Source: Basidiobolus meristosporus CBS 931.73
Lineage: Eukaryota; Fungi; Basidiobolomycota
Reading direction: 5' to 3'
NCBI GenBank assembly: GCA_002104905.1
Contig: MCFE01000219.1
Span: forward strand, 60,252 to 124,251
Length of the DNA: 64,000 bases
Shown here in pieces: positions 46,053 to 64,000 of the stretch. The notes beneath the pieces are model-generated. The model was not told the origin of the DNA and made no database searches. It worked only from the letters and a program-made list of their open reading frames with translations. Numbering within the stretch: the stretch's first letter is position 1; each line of letters opens with the position of its first letter. The translations under genes and the position numbers were made by a program.

Positions 46053-48513
46053 AATGTATATACTTGTTGCCAACCATCTCTCACAAAATCACATGCCAAT
46101 GGCTGGCTGATATTTCTTCAGGACACTTTTTTTGCCTCAAAGCCTATGCATAGGTACCATGCAAAGACCGATGTACACATCATACTGCCCTGAATAGAAA
46201 AGAGTCAAAGGCACGATTTTAAATGGATTTGTACCAAAATCATGGTTATATTTCACAAAATCAATAACAAGGAAAACATTTGTCTAGACTTGATTGTTTC
46301 CCGTGATTTTCCGATCCATAGTGACATACTATGTTATTTACCATTGGTAGAATACATGATTTACCGCAATTATCAAATATGAAACACGAAGGTCAAATAA
46401 CTGACTGTACTTGAAAATTAGCAACGCGGCCATACCAGACTGCATTCCAAGTATAATTATAAGACGAAATGGTGCACCAAGTCCTCTACATACCTCACAT
46501 CCACCACACGTTCTAGCTTGCAAATCAAAGACTAGTCCCTCAGTAGTTCGAGTTTGCGTGAAACATCCGGTTCAGGAACATTGCCAAGAATAGTATGATT
46601 TGCGAGTGGTATGTAACACAGTGATTTTCAACATCAAACACAACTCTGAAACCCACGAAAACTCATGAATGCAACAGCGAGGATGGAGGTTACTGGTGAG
46701 AAATGGGGATGGGAATCTCTGCAGCCAGAGCGCGTGTAGAAGAACGAGCTTGCGATGTTCTCCTTGAGCCAAGATAAGATGGATTGGAAGCTGATGCGCT
46801 TACAAAATTCGTGGAGACGGCAGCCTCCAAAATTACCCACATGGTCATCAGATTATGCAAGTAATTTGAGTTTACCTCTAAGCAATTCTATGGTTTTGAT
46901 TCATGGATTCAGGTGATGCAACCAAAAAAAAAGCCATTTGGATTTTGATGACCGCATTAGGTTACACGATCCCTTGCATGCATTCCATGGCCTGATGGCC
47001 CACAACAATGTGGCATGGATCGCGCGCTTCTACCCTCGTATCTACGACTGGGAGGTAAAAGTCAGTCATGTCGTCAATCTGAACTGCCTCCGCCATCGCA
47101 CGTATAATATTGTTGAGGCAATCAACCAACCCAGTGAAGGGCAGGCGGCTTCAATTTTGGATATATTGCTGACTAACCGGCTGGCTGATCGACCCCTATC
47201 ACCTGACGTGCGCTAACCAGTGATCTGGATAATCGCAACCCGTAAGCATTAAAGTCTAACGTGTATCGACGCATCGAAAATTTTTGATTAAGATTTCCCA
47301 CCGCAAATCAAAAGTCTCGACCATTCAAAGTCAAAGATATAACAAATAGGAAATTTTCTGGCTTCGGTTTTGAGCGTAGGAATGGAATATGAAATTTGAA
47401 AAAGGCCTTCCATTTTTGTCCCAACACGTACCTTGAATGGGCCAGATGACCTCATTATCAGGGTGAGAATGGTAGGTGATTTTATTTGCAGATATAGAGA
47501 GATTGAGATGGAGGATTTAGAGATCCTGTTAAAATGCGCGAAGCGAGATGGATGCGCACTGCGCAATGAGTTTTGCGGCCACACATCTTTGGGTTTTAAT
47601 TGGGCATATTGATCCAACGCTCCCGCAATCTATACTAGAACGAACGGCGCTTTCTGGCGAACGTGTGAATTTGATAAGGATAGTGGTCTAGAAGGCCTAA
47701 CCTAATGGCACGTAGGCTCGAATGAAATGCCGGCAAAGGCTGTTATTTCAGGTTTTTTTCGCACCGTCCCGGTGGTAATAGGGTCTTCCAAGTGGCACTA
47801 TCCATACTACTTGACCATATCGTTCTCAGGAATGCATGTGGTGTTTCTCGCCAGGAACCTAATACAGCCATGTTATTGGCTTTCCTTGTATATCCAATCG
47901 GCACTCGGCTGTGGTTACAGATTCACGATTGTTCATCTATCGTTCGGAATATGATGTAATGGTCGACCTCTGCATTCACTAAATGAACCTGCCATGCCTC
48001 ATTAGACACCATTGCCATATTTGCAAGTACAAATAAATTACATCCAGAGGGAATTCATCTGCTCTCTGGGCGAACTGATTCTTAAATATTCTATATACTT
48101 GATTGGCTTTCGGCCAAATGTTCTTCAGAATATTCCAGGATACATGCCAAATACAGTCCCTGAAAGTATATCTGAAAGGGTCTTTGGTCGAAAATGGCCA
48201 TAGTAGGACATTGAACCCAGGTTGACGTCAAAATTGTGACATTAAAAATATGGTTTGTGCTTGATAAGGAAAACAGAGTGGCAACGCTCTGTTGATGGAG
48301 ATGGCCTCAATAGCTACCCACTTAGTTTTCTCGAAGCATACGATTACGGCGCGACATCTATATAAGCAGCCTTCTGCCTCGGGGACTCAAGCATCTGGCA
48401 ACTCCGGTCAACATCCTCGACTCTTTGGAATCAAACATCCTACAAGGCCTTGAGCAATATTCTATACATCACTGATTTGAAAGAGTGTCAAGAGATTCAA
48501 AGACCAATTCACC

Positions 48514-51500
48514 ATGAGAAGCCTGTTGTCACGCATCGTAGTGGTAACCTCCATTCTACTATGCTTATCTTTGGTTGTAGCGGTCCCCTTTACACCAAGT
48601 GAGTAGCTCTTTAATGCATCATTGATTCCATGAATACATAGCTCATCATCCTCTTTTAGTTAATTCTCATAATGCCGAAGGACAGGCATGTCCTCTGAAA
48701 ACTAAATACGATGCTCAGTGCCCCAAGCTCTGTGTTGCCGATATCAGCCAATGTCCATCTGATATAACTCCTACATGCCCTACCGGGCAAAGCTACTGTG
48801 GTGATGGGAAATGCCACGACTCTTGTGATCGAGTTGTCAGTGTTTGCAGCTGTGATGGCTCGAGTTCAAGCATGGTACCATGCCTTGATACAAAAACCGT
48901 GAACGTCCCGAAATACAATCCCAAGGAGGGTGACAAGCAAGTTGCTGAAACTTGTACCCGTGAGCTGGGATTGCTCGATGTCCCCATGTGGTCCGCTGGA
49001 TTTAAAGGAAATATGGTTTGGATGAGCTGCCCTAAAACTGCCGTCAAAGGCCACTTTACCTATAAAGAGCCGATGTGGATTGTTGCTTGGGTAATCATTG
49101 CAACAGAAGCTGGTATTCTGGGCTTGTGGACTCTGTACAAGAACATCCGTGAAAGAGGGGTCGGTCATATCTCGCAGGCTGAGTCATTCAGAAGCACCAA
49201 GGAGCTCAGCGAGAAAGCAGATAAGGAGAAGGAGAAGGTCACTGAAGTCGAGGATTCATCCGACGCCGACGACTTCACACTAACAGGATACTCTAACGAT
49301 ATACTTGGTTTCCTCGGCTTCTATTCGGTGATCTTCATGGCTTTAGCATGGTTGGTCTGGTTAGCCGTCATTACCGCCGATTATTATGGCACTGTCACCG
49401 GTCTCGCTTATGGTCTATTCTATGGTGACTCAGACCTTTCGATGTACGTGTTCATGATCGTGTGGTACCTGGCGGCCTTCTGGTTCCTCATGATGAACGC
49501 CACCAGGGCTCGTATGAGAAACTTCTTCCGCCTCAAATCTCAGGCCACTAAGTGCCAATTCATCCAGATTGAGAAGCCACTAGCTACTACGATTTTACTC
49601 AACGATAACAGCAAAATGCTTAACATGGTCACCCTTGTCGAAAACAAAATCAAGTCTCTCTTCAAGTGGAACTTCCATGTAACCACCTCACCAGTTAAGG
49701 CCACTACCTTGGGTCGCCGGTACTTCGAATTCCAATGTACCCGTTATGTCTATGACGATCAGCTGGCAGTATACAAGCCATTCAACGTAGAAGTCGGAGA
49801 AAAGAATTATGAATTGGTCAGCCAAAGTGAAGGTCTCACAAATGAGACCGTATTACATCGCCGTGAGCTTATCGGAGAGAACTTTATTCAAGTCTACGTT
49901 CCCTCGTTCCCCGTTGCTCTTCTGCAGGAATTTGCCTCCTTGTTCTACCTTTACCAAATCATGATCCTGTGGCTTTTCTACTACTTCAACTATTACTATA
50001 TCGGTCTTGTGGACACTGGTGTCATTCTCATTTCCGCCTTGATTCGAGTGTTTACCAGACTGAACTCTGAGCATAGAGTGAAAAAGATGGCTGAGCACCA
50101 AAGTGAATGTGTTATTCTTCGTGAAGGCGAATGGATCACTTTGTCTACTTCAGATCTCGTTCCAGGGGATGTCTTTGAAGTTAAGAAGGGAATCACCGTT
50201 CCATGCGATGCGGTCGTGCTCGGTGGTAACATTGTTGCTGACGAAAGTTCCTTGACTGGCGAGCCTCTCCCCATCCGTAAATTCCCAATCAAGGACGACG
50301 ACCAAGATTATGATCCCCAAGGAGCCGGCAAAATCAGCACTCTCTATGCTGGTACTACCATTTCTCAAGCTAGTCGCACTGGTGATATGAAGGGCGATAG
50401 AGTCTCCGCACTTGTGACCCGTACCGGTACCTCTACCGACAAGGGTCAATTAGTTCGTAGAATTCTGTTCCCAAATCCCATCTCCTTCATTTTCGATCAA
50501 CAACTCAAAATCGTGATGCTTATCCTTCTTCTCTGGGGCTTGGTATGCTTCGCTTGCTCTATTTGGCTCGGTCGCAACGGTGGAATTGCCTCCTGGTTCT
50601 ACGGAATGTTTGCCATCTCTCAGATTATTAGTCCTTTGCTGCCAGCTGCTCTCGTAGTAGGCCAATCTGTTGCAGCGAAACGCCTCCGTGATAAAAAGAT
50701 CTTCTGTGTCGACTTGCCTAGAATCATCATTGCCGGTAAAGTCCAAATGTTCTGCTTTGACAAAACCGGTACTCTGACAAAGGAAGGTCTCGAGTTCTAT
50801 GGTGTTCAGCCGGTGGACGGCTATGAAGACAGAATTGGCCAAGATTTAAGCCAAACCAAACTCAAATTTGGTCCGCATACCGAAGCTTTCTCTGATATTA
50901 CCAGTCTATTTAAGGTTGGACTTGCCACTTGCCACTCGGTTACTCAAGTGGAAGATCAATTGATTGGTAATCCTGTTGATATTGAAATGTTCCGCTCTAC
51001 AAAATGGCAACTCCAAGATCAACCTGAGAAAGGATTCGTCGACTCCATCAAGTCAACAGACGACCCTACTGGACATCTTGTTCATGTAGTCAAACGTTTC
51101 GAGTTCATCCACGCTAGAGCCTCTATGTCAGTCGCAGTTTTGGATCCAGTAACTCAGCATGTCCATATCTTCGTGAAGGGCTCCTTCGAGAAAGTGAAGG
51201 AGCTGTCAAACCCTGCCTCCATTCCCCTCGAGTATGATGACATGGCCAACAAATTGGCCATGGAAGGCTGCTATGTGTTGGCCATGGCTCACTGTGATCT
51301 CGGAAAAATTGATCCCGAAACCGTTCGTACCTTGAGCCGTGAACAATTGGAATCCAATATTGATTTCATGGGCCTTGTCCTTTTCAAAAATATGCTTAAG
51401 CCCGATACCAAGGAGGCCATTGCCGAGCTCAAGGAAGGTGATACCCGCACTATAATGATTACTGGCGACACCGCATTGACCGGTATCTACATTGCCCGTG

Positions 51501-52756
51501 CTTGCGAAATGCTTCCACCAAATAACCGAGTTCTTCTCGGAGACATTAACCGTGACGGAGAGGTTGTATGGTCAGATGTTGATACTGGAGCAGTTGCAGA
51601 TGTAGAGCAGGCGCTCAGTGAAAAGGCTACCCACCCTGTAGAGCTAGCTGTAACTGCCAAGGCATTCAACGCTCTTTGCGATTCCAATCAAATCCGAAGA
51701 TTACTACTGGATATTCGGGTCTTTGCCCGTATGAAGCCTCACGATAAAGTAGAATGCGTTCAATTGCACATGGAACGTGGTGTTACTGCTATGTGCGGTG
51801 ATGGTGGTAATGATTGCGGTGCACTTAGAGCTTCCCATGTTGGTATTGCCCTTAGTGATGCAGAAGCCTCCATTGTTTCGCCTTTCAGTTCCAGCTTCCG
51901 TTCTATCATGTCTTGTGTTGAGTTGTTGAAGCAAGGTAGAGCCGCTTTGGCAACCTCCTTCGCTGGATACAAGTATCTTATCATGTATGGGCAAACCATG
52001 TCTTGGATGAAGATCTTTACGTTCTATTTCTCCATGACGCCATCCCAATACGTTTGGATTCTTATTGACGCCTTTATCACTGTGGGTCTGTCGTGGACTA
52101 TTTCTCAATCCAAGCCTGCTAAGAGACTCGCCGACAGCCGTCCTACCGCCCGTATTCTTGGACCTGAAACCATGGCATCTGTGCTTGGCCTCGTTGTCAT
52201 CAACCATCTCTTTGTCATTGGTGCCTACTGTTTCCTTCGCAAGCAACCCTTCTACTTGTGTAATGAATTCGATTCTTCCACCGTTGACTATGCTAAGTGG
52301 TGGTTGCTTGGTGACAACTACGAGGCAGAGCTCAGTGCCCTTGTCGCACTTTTCCAGTTTGTCAACTCTGCTTTCATCTTCAATATCGGATACAAATTCC
52401 GCGCAAGATGGTATCGCAACTACCCATTAATTTTCCTTTGGGCTGTGTTTGTTGCAATTGTTTCGTACGTCGAACTTGCCGATCCTAATCGATTTGGTTG
52501 TATTTTCCGGTTCAACTGTGGTGACCCCGACAGACTAGTTGCTCTTGGATATAAGCGCCCCGATTGGTATATTGAGCCTTATAACTTGCCACAAGGACAT
52601 AACGTAATGCCAAGATACTTCCGCTGGAAGCTTTGGGGCTTGAGTCTTTCCAACATGGCTCTCGGAGTTATCTGGCAAACATTCTTTGTACTTGGGCCTG
52701 TTCGTGAATACTTGAGAAAAAGATATCCTCTCCAGCGCCTCAAGGTTAAATTGTAA
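48514..52756 (+). CDS. P5-type (P5B-like, ATP13A/Ypk9-related) P-type ATPase with N-terminal signal peptide and Cys-rich ectodomain, about 1393 aa
   Basis: Exon 1 48514-48598, a 61-nt GTGAGT...TTTTAG intron, then exon 2 48660-52756 in frame with the 1294-aa ORF. Motifs: DESSLTGEPLP, SPLLPAAL, CFDKTGTLTKEGL, VKGSFE, MITGD, VFARMKPHDK, MCGDGGNDCGAL. Confidence 0.93.
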
Positions 52757-61524: not shown

Positions 61525-62481
61525 TGTGGTGAGAGTTTTGGAGATATTGGAAATGATTGAGTGAACAAGTAGACTTTGTGATTATCACTTAGTGATTTCT
61601 TGAATGCAAAGGTAGTTTTCATACTTCTACATGGTATTGGTAAACTAAGTATTTTGAATACACCAAGGAAGGTTTCAGCCACAAATGTGCAAAGTCAGGG
61701 GCTGTTTGGACAACTTGGAGATGTTTCCTGTTTTGGGTACCTGAAATATTTGGTGAAAACATTCTGAATATATCCTGATAAGATAGTTGTTCAGAACTCT
61801 GTAAGATCTATAGGTAATAATCCAAGTGACTAAGCTAGGGAAATATATAAATGTAAATACAAAATTTACAACACTCCCACTCTACTAAATAATCATATCA
61901 GCCAATGCCAATTGTGGTCTAGGATATTCAGTTTTGTATCCAGCAAATGGTTTGGTAAATATGTCTGCATTCATTTCTCCAGGGAGGCATGAACATTGTT
62001 TAGAGGTGAAATCTTTATCTAGTTATGAGAAATATCTGGAGAAGCCAAGTTAATCCATATAATTCCTAGAAAGCTAGGTCTGAGAGAAATTTTTGTTATA
62101 AGAGTCTTGAAAATATTGGAAGTGACTTGGAGAGCAAGTAGATTATGTGGTTTTCACTTAATGATTAATTGAATGTAAAAGTAGTGTTTATACTTTTACA
62201 TGGTCTTGGCATTACAAACATGTAGAATAGGTTAAGGAAGGTCCCAAAAGCATGTGTGCAAAGTTTGGGGCTGCTTGTACAACTTATCATACTTTCATCT
62301 TCTGGGTACCTGGTACTTTGGTGAAAATATTCCAAGTAAATTCCAACAAGGAATTTGGTCAGTATTCCCTAGGATTGGAAGGTAATGATCTAAGTGACTA
62401 AGATAGGTGAATATTTAGGTGGAATTACAAATATTTACAACAATTTCCAGGTATGCTATGCTTGAGAGTTAAGAAGCTCAG
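61525..62481 (-). mobile_element. 3' end of a copia element (3' LTR 61525-61873, PPT 61874-61883, RNaseH remnant); everything further 5' is missing
   Basis: The LTR is followed by CTCCCACTCT (reverse PPT) and a GEMNADIFTKP-coding segment. Homology stops at the non-LTR element. Confidence 0.8.
62094..62442 (-). mobile_element. Solo LTR inserted in the RNaseH remnant
   Basis: 349 bp, TG...CA, with TSD ATTTT/ATTTC. Confidence 0.9.
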
Positions 62482-63772
62482 TTAGGGGAGGGGGAACCAC
62501 CATTATATGTGATCTTTGTTGTCAATCATTTAGGGGGGGGGGAGACAGTCATCAACAGGTGAAATCTTTATTTCAGTTGAAACAAAGAAGCCAGTGCTAC
62601 TGATGTAGCTTTGATACAAGAGTGTGTAGCTGAGGGGAGTTTGTAGGTAAGTTTACCAGATGTGATGATAGTTCTTCAGTGCTCAACACACTGTTCAGTG
62701 GGAAGGAGGGTAGCAAGAGGGGTAAGAATGACTTGTGAACAACATTAATGAGGGGAATATGATATGGATTGATATTCATCATGAAGGGAGTATGCTGCTT
62801 CAGATATTGCTGCCAAAGGTCTGTCAAGTACTTCAGGTAGGCCAGCTTGGGTTTTTCTGACTGCAGAATATGGTAAGCAAACTTCTTGACTTCAGGATCT
62901 CCAAGTATAGTTCTCCAGCAGGAGTCAGGTGTAGTGTGGTGTGTTCTCTTCCAGGCCTTAATCAATGGGTTGTTGCAGTGGTGAAGTCTGAGATATAATC
63001 TGGTTCAAAGGTAGAGAAGTCTGATCTTATAGGGCATAAGCCCAAAAACACCAAGAATAGCATGTCTGTAGGGGCATTCAGGCAGATCAGGCACCAGGGA
63101 TGTAATGCACCATACTGCAAACCTGTCAGGCTTAGTGCAGTCTCTAGAAGTAAGAGAAAGAAGTGGTAAGCCAAATTCCAGGACAGGGAAGACAAACTGC
63201 CTGAGTAGAAGGAGGCAGCTGGGAGCTGAAGTTGTAGGAGAAGTTACAGCCAGTAGCTTGTGGAGTGCTTGTCTTGCCAGGATAATTCTCTTCTTAAGGT
63301 GTGCTCTAAAGTCTAGTCCAGTAGGAAGCAAAGGAAAGCCAAGATATGAAGCAGAAACTTGAGCAGTTAGAGTGCAGCTTTCTAAGTTGATAGGACAACC
63401 CAAAGGTACTGTCTTTGCAATGGAAAGCTGGAGATTATTCTTCTGCAGATACTAGTGGATGGTCTGGGAGTCTTGTTGCACATTGGAGGAGGATATTCTG
63501 ATGTCATCAGCAAAGAGAGTAACCAGGCAGTCAGCTGAGAGTCTTGGGAAATCATTCAGGAAGATGGCAAACAGGATAGGACCAAGCACAGAGCCTTGAA
63601 CCACTCCATTAGGAACTGAGAACACAGCTGATTGCTCACTTGGGTGCAGAATTCTTGCTTGTGGATCCAGAAACAGAGACCTGACAAGGAGGGTGAGAGA
63701 GGTACTGGAGGAGCATTGCAACTTGGACCAAAGCAGATTTCTGTCAATTGAATCAAAGGCCTTAGTAATATC
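62482..63772 (-). mobile_element. 5'-truncated non-LTR (LINE-like) retrotransposon abutting the telomere
   Basis: One reading frame 63772 to 62597 (392 codons) with two premature stops (63452, 63005): DITKAFDSIDRNLLWSKL (RT3), GVVQGSVLGPILFAIFLND (RT4), LFADD (RT5), KT (RT6), YLGFPL (RT7), PVLEFG. A ~115-bp 3' UTR ends in CCCCTAA. Confidence 0.9.
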
Positions 63773-64000
63773 TTAGGGTTAGGGTTAGGGTTAGGGTTAG
63801 GGTTAGGGTTAGGGTTAGGGTTAGGGTTAGGGTTAGGGTTAGGGTTAGGGTTAGGGTTAGGGTTAGGGTTAGGGTTAGGGTTAGGGTTAGGGTTAGGGTT
63901 AGGGTTAGGGTTAGGGTTAGGGTTAGGGTTAGGGTTAGGGTTAGGGTTAGGGTTAGGGTTAGGGTTAGGGTTAGGGTTAGGGTTAGGGTTAGGGTTAGGG
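63773..64000 (+). repeat. Telomere (TTAGGG)38
   Basis: 228 bp of perfect TTAGGG running to the end of the window, G-rich strand 5'->3' outward. Confidence 0.99.

What the first reader, a model, noticed from the sequence alone, without database searches (positions are those of the whole stretch)
48514..49140. P5-ATPase with a cleavable signal peptide and a disulfide-rich luminal/extracellular domain
Seen: a spliced first exon missed by the ORF track adds MRSLLSRIVVVTSILLCLSLVVA-VPFTP, then about 140 aa with 13 Cys (CPLKTKYDAQCPKLCVADISQCPSDITPTCPTGQSYCGDGKCHDSCDRVVSVCSC...C...C...C), a transmembrane helix, an acidic/basic loop, and only then the usual P5 N-terminal membrane segments and core. 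Established: characterised P5A (Spf1/ATP13A1) and P5B (Ypk9/ATP13A2-5) pumps have no signal peptide or N-terminal ectodomain. Inference: a receptor-like pump in which an external Cys-rich module binds a ligand or substrate or gates transport. Similar architectures may exist unannotated in other early-diverging eukaryotes.
Basis: partly seen in the sequence, partly recalled or inferred. Interest (0 to 1): 0.7.

Follow-up and report, generated by a model that had tools for sequence, protein, structure and literature searches.

The report
P5 pump with built-in ectodomain
This Basidiobolus gene encodes a P5-type ATP-driven pump that starts with a secretion signal, a disulfide-rich outside-facing domain of unknown fold and an extra membrane helix; the layout is shared by hundreds of unnamed pumps in early-diverging fungi, an ichthyosporean and diatoms, and no paper I could search describes it.

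Summary
A gene runs from 48514 to 52756 on the + strand. It has an 85-nt first exon, a 61-nt GT..AG intron and one 4097-nt ORF.

Its parts, in order:
- a signal peptide
- a roughly 140-aa domain with 13 cysteines
- an extra helix (TM0)
- a charged linker
- a complete P5 ATPase (TIGR01657, 684 bits; best solved relative ATP13A2)

The genome is Basidiobolus meristosporus. The public protein K493DRAFT_374524 already contains the "missed" exon.

The N-terminal module is a conserved family trait, not a one-off. A profile of it finds 144 cluster representatives. These include Mucorales, Kickxello-, Zoopago- and Entomophthoromycotina, chytrids, Blastocladiomycota and Amoebidium. Diatom pumps carry a divergent version.

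- **Phylogeny:** these pumps form a strongly supported clade apart from canonical P5B (Ypk9/ATP13A2-5) and P5A.
- **Sequence traits:** M4 reads SPLLPA rather than PPALP. Two of the acidic spermine-coordinating residues are replaced. The luminal loops hold three extra invariant cysteines.
- **Ectodomain structure:** AlphaFold models it at pLDDT 93, and it matches no solved structure.

My best reading is that this is a fused module analogous to a beta-subunit or CDC50. That function is inferred, not shown. I could obtain no RNA evidence for this locus.

The parts
48359..48366 (+). TATATAAG, a TATA-like box 148 nt upstream of the ATG
   Evidence: Read directly from the sequence. This is weak support for a transcription start upstream of exon 1.
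48514..48582 (+). Start codon and predicted signal peptide (23 aa)
   Evidence: Translation. Homologues have an equivalent hydrophobic leader. The cleavage site is predicted by rule only; no SignalP was available.
48583..48598 (+). End of exon 1: the first five mature residues (VPFTP) plus the first base of a split codon
   Evidence: The family motif continues across the junction.
48599..48659 (+). Intron, 61 nt, GTGAGT...TTTTAG
   Evidence: The same junction appears in the public JGI protein P0001 and in the B. ranarum orthologue P0003. No RNA run was listed.
48660..49066 (+). Cys-rich ectodomain (exon-2 aa 1-135, 13 Cys)
   Evidence: AlphaFold gives pLDDT 92.8. The Cys are invariant in the family. 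There is no Pfam hit and no structural match.
49070..49153 (+). TM0, the extra membrane helix that returns the chain to the cytosol
   Evidence: Kyte-Doolittle score 1.88. It is modelled as a helix at aa 137-164 with pLDDT 89-98. G, W156 and K160 are conserved.
49154..49276 (+). Charged (acidic/basic) cytosolic linker
   Evidence: Translation. It is variable in length and has low pLDDT (aa 183-201 below 50).
49301..49501 (+). Two hydrophobic helices (aa 214-241 and 257-280) at the position of the P5 N-terminal Ma/Mb membrane segment
   Evidence: pLDDT is about 91. ATP13A2 and P5A structures align to the model from residue 200-204 onward.
49502..52753 (+). P5 N-terminal beta domain and the ten-helix pump core with A, P and N domains
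   Evidence: TIGR01657 scores 684 bits against a cut-off of 618. ATP13A2 matches at 2e-117. The structural alignment gives Z up to 29.6.
50252..50266 (+). A-domain dephosphorylation motif LTGEP (TGE conserved)
50630..50650 (+). M4 motif SPLLPAA, where canonical P5B has PPALPA
   Evidence: The canonical motif is taken from PMC10654040 and PMC5837089.
50759..50773 (+). DKTGT phosphorylation motif
51797..51814 (+). GDGGND hinge motif
52259..52261 (+). Invariant Cys 1200 in the luminal M7-M8 loop
   Evidence: It is 100% conserved in 137 family rows. It is present in all diatom-like rows, is a gap in 18 of 20 canonical P5B rows and is absent from P5A.
52499..52519 (+). Invariant Cys pair 1280 and 1286 in the luminal M9-M10 loop (GCxFRxNCG)
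52754..52756 (+). Stop codon

Best explanation
The gene encodes an active P5-type ATPase of a deep, previously undescribed branch of the P5B group.

Shown from sequence, homologues and models:
- One mRNA-sized unit encodes, in order, a signal peptide, a compact 13-Cys domain, TM0, a charged linker, the P5 Ma/Mb-type membrane segment and a complete pump with intact TGE, DKTGT and GDGGND motifs.
- The same layout is kept in early-diverging fungi, in Amoebidium and, in a divergent form, in diatoms.

Inferred topology: the signal peptide takes the N-terminus into the ER lumen. The Cys-rich domain therefore sits on the luminal or extracellular face and is oxidised and usually N-glycosylated. TM0 brings the chain back to the cytosol, so the rest of the pump has the normal orientation.

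Inferred mechanism: the ectodomain plus TM0 acts as a covalently fused accessory subunit. It is analogous, not homologous, to the Na,K-ATPase beta subunit, CDC50 of P4 flippases or neuroplastin/basigin of PMCA. TM0 would pack against the pump's helices. The ectodomain would cap the luminal loops, possibly tied to the M7-M8 loop by a disulfide between its odd 13th Cys and the invariant Cys 1200. There it would support folding, ER exit and stability, and shape the luminal mouth through which P5B pumps take up substrate.

The substrate is probably an organic cation, but the pocket differs from the spermine site of ATP13A2.
For: Gene model. The junction is reproduced in the public proteins P0001 and P0003.

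P5 identity:
- TIGR01657 scores 684 bits against a cut-off of 618.
- ATP13A2 matches at 2e-117, CtYpk9 at 5e-103 and P5A at 4e-82.

Family distribution:
- The N-terminal profile finds 144 representatives, 42 of them at E<=1e-30.
- All 120 best core hits are early-diverging fungi.
- 137 of 138 long proteins carry the ectodomain, and 86 also have a clear leader.
- Transcript-derived full-length ORFs with the fused layout exist (Amoebidium P0056, and P0137).

Structure:
- The ectodomain models at pLDDT 92.8.
- The 1200-aa model has pLDDT 83.7.
- Known P5 structures cover only model residues 200-204 onward.

Luminal placement:
- 95% of family ectodomains carry NxS/T sequons.
- There are 16 invariant luminal Cys: 13 + 1 + 2.
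- The L7/8 Cys co-occurs with the ectodomain and is missing from canonical P5B and P5A.

Catalytic motifs are intact.

Pocket:
- D967 is kept.
- D254 becomes F/Y/L.
- D960 becomes Q (sometimes E).
- F963 becomes W.
- M4 reads SPLLPA.
Against: - There is no RNA evidence for this locus; no run was listed.
- Signal-peptide cleavage and topology are predicted by rule and hydropathy only.
TM0 packing, the disulfide map and any ectodomain-loop contact are therefore untested.
- The beta-subunit analogy rests on architecture and Cys parity. No structural similarity to beta subunits, CDC50 or Ig-type partners was found.
- The window's own ectodomain has no N-glycosylation sequon.
- The alignment to ATP13A2 in M1-M2 is uncertain.
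- The D463 column is not acidic even in other canonical P5B, so it says nothing.
Confidence: 0.55

Rival explanations
1. Receptor-like pump: the Cys-rich domain binds a specific external ligand or the transported substrate and hands it to, or gates, the transport pathway.
For: - The domain lies on the side from which P5B pumps take up substrate (PMC8564547).
- The fold is well defined.
- A CxDGxC motif with conserved D48-G49 is kept throughout the family.
Against: - Outside the Cys scaffold only four residues are conserved.
- Net charge varies from -13 to +8.
- Identity in this domain is only 26-44% for all homologues but the B. ranarum orthologue (73%), against 53-71% in the core.
- No similarity to any known binding domain was found.
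Confidence: 0.2
2. The hydrophobic leader is an uncleaved signal anchor. The pump would then have two extra N-terminal TM helices, and the Cys-rich domain would be a luminal loop between them.
For: - The h-region is long: 15 residues here and often longer in homologues.
- The placement of the Cys-rich domain and of the pump is the same in this topology.
Against: - The leader has a short basic n-region and a small-x-small site (V-x-A).
- A conserved motif begins immediately after that site in nearly all homologues, which is typical of cleaved signals.
- The leader sequences themselves are not conserved.
Confidence: 0.12
3. Gene-model artefact: the pump is translated from Met71 of exon 2 (48872), and the upstream Cys-rich coding region is untranslated or belongs to another product.
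For: - No RNA data could be obtained for this locus.
- Many database homologues start inside or after the ectodomain.
Against: - The Cys-rich region, TM0 and the pump share one uninterrupted frame.
- All 13 Cys and TM0 are conserved at the protein level across phyla.
- Transcriptome-derived ORFs encode the whole fusion.
- A start at Met71 would fall inside the folded domain and leave an odd number of TM helices with no signal to orient them.
- The truncated homologues lack a short first exon or sit at contig ends.
Confidence: 0.04
4. It is an ordinary polyamine-importing P5B like Ypk9/ATP13A2, and the N-terminal module is only a sorting or quality-control appendage with no effect on transport.
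For: - ATP13A2 is the best solved relative.
- D967 and the aromatic pocket residues are retained.
- TIGR01657 names the family as polyamine exporters.
Against: - D254 and D960 are replaced family-wide.
- M4 differs from PPALP.
- The clade is separate from canonical P5B.
- A chytrid protein (P0370) shows that canonical P5B occurs in early-diverging fungi as well. This suggests the two types are not redundant.
Confidence: 0.25

Closest known systems
P5B ATPases: human ATP13A2-5, yeast and Chaetomium Ypk9
   Same: - Best sequence and structure match (2e-117; Z up to 29.6 over model residues 204-1200).
- Passes the TIGR01657 cut-off.
- Has a hydrophobic N-terminal membrane segment before M1.
- Keeps D967 and the aromatic pocket residues.
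- In my trees it lies on the P5B side of the P5A/P5B split.
   Different: - About 230 extra N-terminal residues: signal peptide, 13-Cys ectodomain, TM0 and linker. This gives a luminal N-terminus, whereas ATP13A2-4 have both termini in the cytosol (PMC5837089).
- M4 reads SPLLPA, not PPALP.
- No PF12409 hit.
- D254 and D960 are replaced.
- Three extra invariant luminal Cys.
- A separate, strongly supported clade.
P5A ATPases: Spf1 / ATP13A1 (ER transmembrane-helix dislocase)
   Same: - Two N-terminal helices precede the core, at the place where Spf1 and ATP13A1 have the Ma/Mb hairpin. Structures align from model residue about 200.
- The catalytic core is the same.
   Different: - The sequence match is weaker (4e-82).
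- M4 lacks the acidic PP(D/E)xPx(D/E) motif.
- No PF23143.
- P5A forms its own clade (100).
- P5A has no signal peptide or ectodomain.
Accessory subunits of other P-type ATPases: Na,K/H,K-ATPase beta, CDC50 (P4), neuroplastin/basigin (PMCA)
   Same: - One membrane helix plus a disulfide-bonded, glycosylated ectodomain on the exoplasmic face of a P-type pump.
- From general knowledge, the beta subunit docks on the M7-M8 loop. That is where this family has an extra invariant Cys.
   Different: - Here the module is fused to the pump's N-terminus rather than being a separate protein.
- There is no sequence or fold similarity.
- No accessory subunit is known for any P5 pump.
- The resemblance is in architecture only and has not been tested.
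Apicomplexan P5B-like pumps (Plasmodium ATPase1/ATPase3, Cryptosporidium 'ATPase3, 13 transmembrane regions')
   Same: - They fall in the same large clade in the 71-row tree (SH-aLRT 100).
- They share the M9-M10 Cys pair.
- The literature already suspects that they are not polyamine pumps (PMC12655044).
   Different: - The sequences seen have no signal peptide and no Cys-rich ectodomain.
- Their long branches make the placement uncertain.

Membership tests
P-type ATPase superfamily | DKTGT phosphorylation motif, TGE dephosphorylation motif and GDGxND hinge | tested here: met
   DKTGT lies at 50759-50773, LTGEP at 50252-50266 and GDGGND at 51797-51814. Pfam E1-E2_ATPase hits at 1.7e-26.
P5 (type V) ATPases, TIGR01657 | Score above the curated whole-protein cut-off | tested here: met
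   684 bits against a cut-off of 618.25, with profile positions 23-1041 on exon-2 aa 268-1284.
Canonical P5B (Ypk9/ATP13A2-5) | M4 motif PP(A/V)xP(A/V), i.e. PPALP | tested here: not met
   The motif is S-P-L-L-P-A-A. S is found in 124 of 138 family rows and L in 126 of 138. P-P-A is found in 18-20 of 20 canonical rows.
Canonical P5B (Ypk9/ATP13A2-5) | PF12409 P5-ATPase N-terminal domain | tested here: not met
   No Pfam hit at E<=10 on aa 160-420 or on the whole protein, and none in the precomputed lists for the family. All canonical P5B carry it. The region does still superpose on the ATP13A2 N-terminal domain.
Canonical P5B (Ypk9/ATP13A2-5) | Both termini cytosolic, with the N-terminal hydrophobic segment not crossing the membrane | tested here: not met
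   A signal peptide plus one extra TM before the Ma region predicts a luminal N-terminus. This is a prediction only; the experimental reference is PMC5837089.
Canonical P5B (Ypk9/ATP13A2-5) | Acidic and aromatic spermine-coordinating residues (W251, D254, D960, F963, D967 of ATP13A2) | tested here: inconclusive
   D967 is kept and W251/F963 stay aromatic. D254 becomes F/Y/L and D960 becomes Q/E. The M1-M2 alignment is uncertain.
Canonical P5B (Ypk9/ATP13A2-5) | Placement inside the canonical P5B clade | tested here: not met
   It falls in a separate clade with SH-aLRT 100 in both quick trees, under LG+G4 and under LG+C20+F+G4 PMSF. The backbone is unresolved and the careful search did not finish.
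P5A (Spf1/ATP13A1) | M4 motif PP(D/E)xPx(D/E), PF23143 and clade membership | tested here: not met
   M4 has L where P5A has E. There is no PF23143. P5A is a separate clade with support 100.
Beta-subunit / CDC50-type accessory modules | Homology or shared fold with a known accessory subunit | tested here: not met
   The best Foldseek hit in the PDB has E 3.5. The best VIA wide hit has Z 2.1. The ESM Atlas gives TM <=0.30. Only the architecture is alike.
Beta-subunit / CDC50-type accessory modules | Physical contact of the TM helix and ectodomain with the pump's luminal loops | not testable with these tools
The only hint is the co-occurring invariant Cys in L7/8.

The most novel reading that the evidence does not exclude
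This is a third ancient P5 lineage, present before opisthokonts and stramenopiles diverged and later lost in Dikarya and animals. In it the pump carries its own beta-subunit-like module of a new disulfide-rich fold, tied to the M7-M8 loop by a disulfide. It transports something other than spermine. It would be the first P-type ATPase with a cleaved signal peptide and a luminal N-terminus.
Probability: 0.3. Interest if true: 0.8.

Novelty: new variant of a known kind. Interest (0 to 1): 0.64.

Why it matters
As far as I know, P-type ATPases are described as having cytosolic N-termini, and P5 pumps as working without accessory subunits. A conserved P5 branch with a signal peptide, a luminal domain of unmatched fold and an extra helix breaks both rules. 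It also offers a natural fusion in which to study how exoplasmic modules support or gate a pump.

The finding shows that opisthokonts had a second, non-canonical P5B-type pump. Reviews count one P5B in fungi, assigned to polyamine transport. This bears on the open question of what P5B pumps carry besides polyamines.

The family has several copies in Mucorales, including Rhizopus, Mucor, Lichtheimia and Apophysomyces. None turned up among the animal or Dikarya proteins listed. Its exposed domain could therefore be a lineage-specific marker or a handle for study.

Tried and rejected
- **RNA evidence:** The look-up of sequencing runs listed no run, so read laying was not used and the junction is not confirmed by reads.
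- **Domain searches on the ectodomain and the linker/Ma region:** Pfam at E<=10 gave nothing. The ESM Atlas gave nothing by features and only TM <=0.30 by shape. Foldseek against the PDB and the VIA wide search gave no credible match. Weak local rows to LDL-receptor class A modules (E 7-9) were not taken as evidence.
- **Promoter and terminator scan:** the tool is bacterial-type and uninformative here.
- **D463 of ATP13A2 as a marker:** rejected, because the column is not acidic in other canonical P5B.
- **Careful IQ-TREE search with bootstraps:** it did not finish in three runs, 618 s in total. Only quick trees with SH-aLRT support are cited.
- **Disulfide map and TM0/ectodomain contacts:** not possible, because model coordinates are not exposed to scripts.
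- **Separate-gene idea for the Cys domain:** rejected, because it shares one uninterrupted ORF with the pump.
- **Joined exon 1 + exon 2 protein:** I did not build or search it. Exons were handled separately by reference, and the public protein P0001, which already contains the join, was used as returned.
- **Earlier findings of this scan:** they held only the same note on this stretch.
Full report
**The observation.** On the + strand an ATG at 48514 opens 28 codons that read as a signal peptide: basic start, 15-residue hydrophobic core, V-x-A. A GTGAGT donor at 48599 and a TTTTAG acceptor ending at 48659 define a 61-nt intron. Exon 2 (48660-52756) is one open frame to the stop, and the two exons total 1393 codons. 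The exon-2 frame is open from 48626 but has no start codon before 48872, so the Cys-rich stretch needs an upstream exon. If the intron is retained, the frame stops at 48604. A TATATAAG lies 148 nt upstream of the ATG. I handled the two exons separately by reference and did not build or search a joined sequence. The only joined form I used is the public protein that a search returned.

**Source and public annotation.** The window is from Basidiobolus meristosporus CBS 931.73. Protein K493DRAFT_374524 (P0001, 1348 aa) is 100% identical over the N-terminal query and begins with exactly this first exon and junction. The exon was therefore not missed by public annotation. The B. ranarum orthologue (P0003) has the same junction sequence. 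P0001 differs from the uninterrupted ORF by five deletions of 24-36 nt. These deletions remove family-conserved residues, including the ARMxPxxK motif and the invariant NCG cysteine.

**It is a P5 pump.** Exon 2 scores 684 bits on TIGR01657 against a cut-off of 618, over residues 268-1284. The best solved relatives are:
- human ATP13A2, 2e-117
- Chaetomium Ypk9, 5e-103
- P5A pumps, 4e-82 and weaker

TGE, DKTGT and GDGGND are intact. Pfam finds no PF12409.

**The N-terminal module is a family trait.** Conidiobolus coronatus has a homologue with its own leader, the same 13 Cys, TM0, the linker and two helices, at 37-40% identity. A two-sequence profile of this region, searched against 1.84 billion cluster representatives, found 144 proteins at E<=1e-3, 92 at <=1e-10 and 42 at <=1e-30. 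About twenty of them are full-length pumps of 1300-1500 aa in which the match starts at residue 20-45. Named members come from:
- Mucorales
- Kickxellomycotina
- Zoopagomycotina
- Entomophthoromycotina
- Chytridiomycota
- Blastocladiomycota
- Olpidium
- the ichthyosporean Amoebidium parasiticum

A search with the pump core gave 2102 hits at E<=1e-30. The best 120 are all early-diverging fungi at 53-71% identity, apart from the window's own protein (99%) and a B. ranarum fragment (92%), and four are paralogues in this genome. Of 138 long proteins, 137 match an ectodomain HMM, and 86 also show a clear hydrophobic leader. Most of the rest are N-truncated models. Two members come from transcript assemblies that encode the whole fusion in one ORF.

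**Structure.** AlphaFold models the ectodomain plus TM0, using a 65-row alignment, at mean pLDDT 92.8 and pTM 0.75. No match was found:
- Foldseek against the PDB, best E 3.5.
- The independent wide search, best Z 2.1.
- The ESM Atlas, TM 0.30 or less.
- The language-model search, nothing.

A 1200-residue model has pLDDT 83.7 and pTM 0.76. It superposes on ATP13A2 over model residues 204-1200 against chain residues 34-1031 (Z 26-29.6), on P5A pumps from residue about 200, and on P2 pumps only from about 373. The helices at 214-241 and 257-280 therefore sit where P5 pumps have their Ma/Mb segment. What is new is everything before residue 204: leader, ectodomain, TM0 and linker. With one extra membrane crossing after a signal peptide, the rest of the pump keeps its normal orientation.

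**Signs of a luminal life and of a link to the pump.** Of 64 family ectodomains, 95% carry at least one NxS/T sequon, although this copy has none. The family has 16 invariant Cys on the luminal side: 13 in the ectodomain, one in the M7-M8 loop (Cys1200) and two in the M9-M10 loop. Cys1200 is present in all fungal, Amoebidium and diatom-like rows. It is a gap in 18 of 20 canonical P5B rows and is absent from P5A. An odd ectodomain count plus one loop Cys suggests an inter-domain disulfide.

**Transport site.** ATP13A2 coordinates spermine through D254, D463, D960 and D967, with W251 and F963 (PMC8564547). The family compares as follows:
- D967 is kept (136 of 138).
- F963 becomes W (132).
- D960 becomes Q (103) or E (16).
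- D254 becomes F, Y or L.
- M4 reads SPLLPA instead of PPALP.

The D463 column is not acidic in other canonical P5B either, so I do not use it. The pocket resembles that of P5B but is less acidic.

**Phylogeny.** A metagenomic outlier with a leader and a Cys-rich start (P0123) has diatoms as its nearest named relatives: Seminavis, Stephanocyclus and Cyclotella. The ranking after them is the fungal family (about 590 bits), an oomycete, canonical P5B carrying PF12409 (about 340 bits), then P5A. The diatom-like proteins have leaders, 10-17 Cys in the first 200 residues (14-17 where the model starts at the leader), and partial ectodomain-HMM hits, most at domain E 1e-5 to 1e-9.

In a 71-row LG+G4 quick tree and a 39-row LG+C20+F+G4 quick tree, the fungal, Amoebidium, oomycete and diatom-like pumps form one clade with SH-aLRT 100. 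This clade stands apart from two canonical P5B groups, one of which contains a chytrid protein, and from P5A. The backbone is unresolved and the bootstrap search did not finish. Amoebidium nests among the fungi, which could reflect weak signal or gene transfer.

**Literature.** Open-access searches found no description of a P5 pump with a signal peptide or ectodomain. What the papers say:
- PMC5837089 shows that ATP13A2-4 have both termini cytosolic, and counts one P5B in fungi.
- PMC10654040 defines P5B by PPALP.
- PMC12655044 argues that P5B diverged in function outside opisthokonts.

Subscription papers were not searchable.

**Reading.** Architecture and conservation are shown. Topology is predicted. 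I read the ectodomain plus TM0 as a fused accessory module analogous to beta subunits, CDC50 or neuroplastin. It would support folding and trafficking and shape the luminal entrance. This remains an inference, and I give it about even odds. A ligand-binding receptor role is less likely, because little beyond the Cys scaffold is conserved and the charge varies widely. An uncleaved anchor, an ordinary polyamine pump with a passive appendage, and a model artefact are listed as rivals. The artefact reading is close to excluded.

No RNA run was listed for this locus, so the junction rests on sequence signals, independent annotations and conservation.

Noticed in passing
window 49484-49507, 51728-51754, 52511-52534, 52604-52630, 52700-52735: The public JGI model K493DRAFT_374524 drops five stretches of 24-36 nt from an uninterrupted ORF. 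These micro-introns remove conserved residues, including the ARMxPxxK motif and the invariant NCG cysteine, and look like gene-model artefacts.
   Followed up: yes
P0056 (Amoebidium parasiticum transcript ORF, 1427 aa): An ichthyosporean carries the full architecture and nests among chytrid and blastoclad sequences in both trees. It could be an ancestral opisthokont gene, or a transfer between gut-dwelling Amoebidium and fungi.
   Followed up: partly
P0002 and P0004 (Conidiobolus coronatus CONCODRAFT_2786 and 2788, same 314,678-bp contig): Two near-identical N-terminal fragments of this pump family lie two locus tags apart on one contig. This suggests a recent tandem duplication or a split model.
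   Followed up: no
P0321, P0324 (Cryptosporidium 'P-type ATPase3, 13 transmembrane regions'): Apicomplexan P5B-like pumps join the same large clade and share the M9-M10 Cys pair, but they have no leader or Cys-rich start. Their branches are long, so the placement is unsure.
   Followed up: partly
P0312 (Lagenidium giganteum, 1546 aa): An oomycete member of the clade has a clear signal peptide and a longer N-terminal region with 7 Cys in its first 200 residues. It gives no hit to the ectodomain HMM, and its M4 reads SPLIPIVM.
   Followed up: no
window 62001-64000: GC skew jumps to +0.36 in the last 2 kb of the window. This is the stretch another first-stage note calls a healed chromosome end with telomere repeats.
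   Followed up: no
P0174, P0175, P0230 (B. meristosporus): This genome holds at least three further paralogues of the ectodomain-bearing pump, at 58-71% identity in the core.
   Followed up: partly
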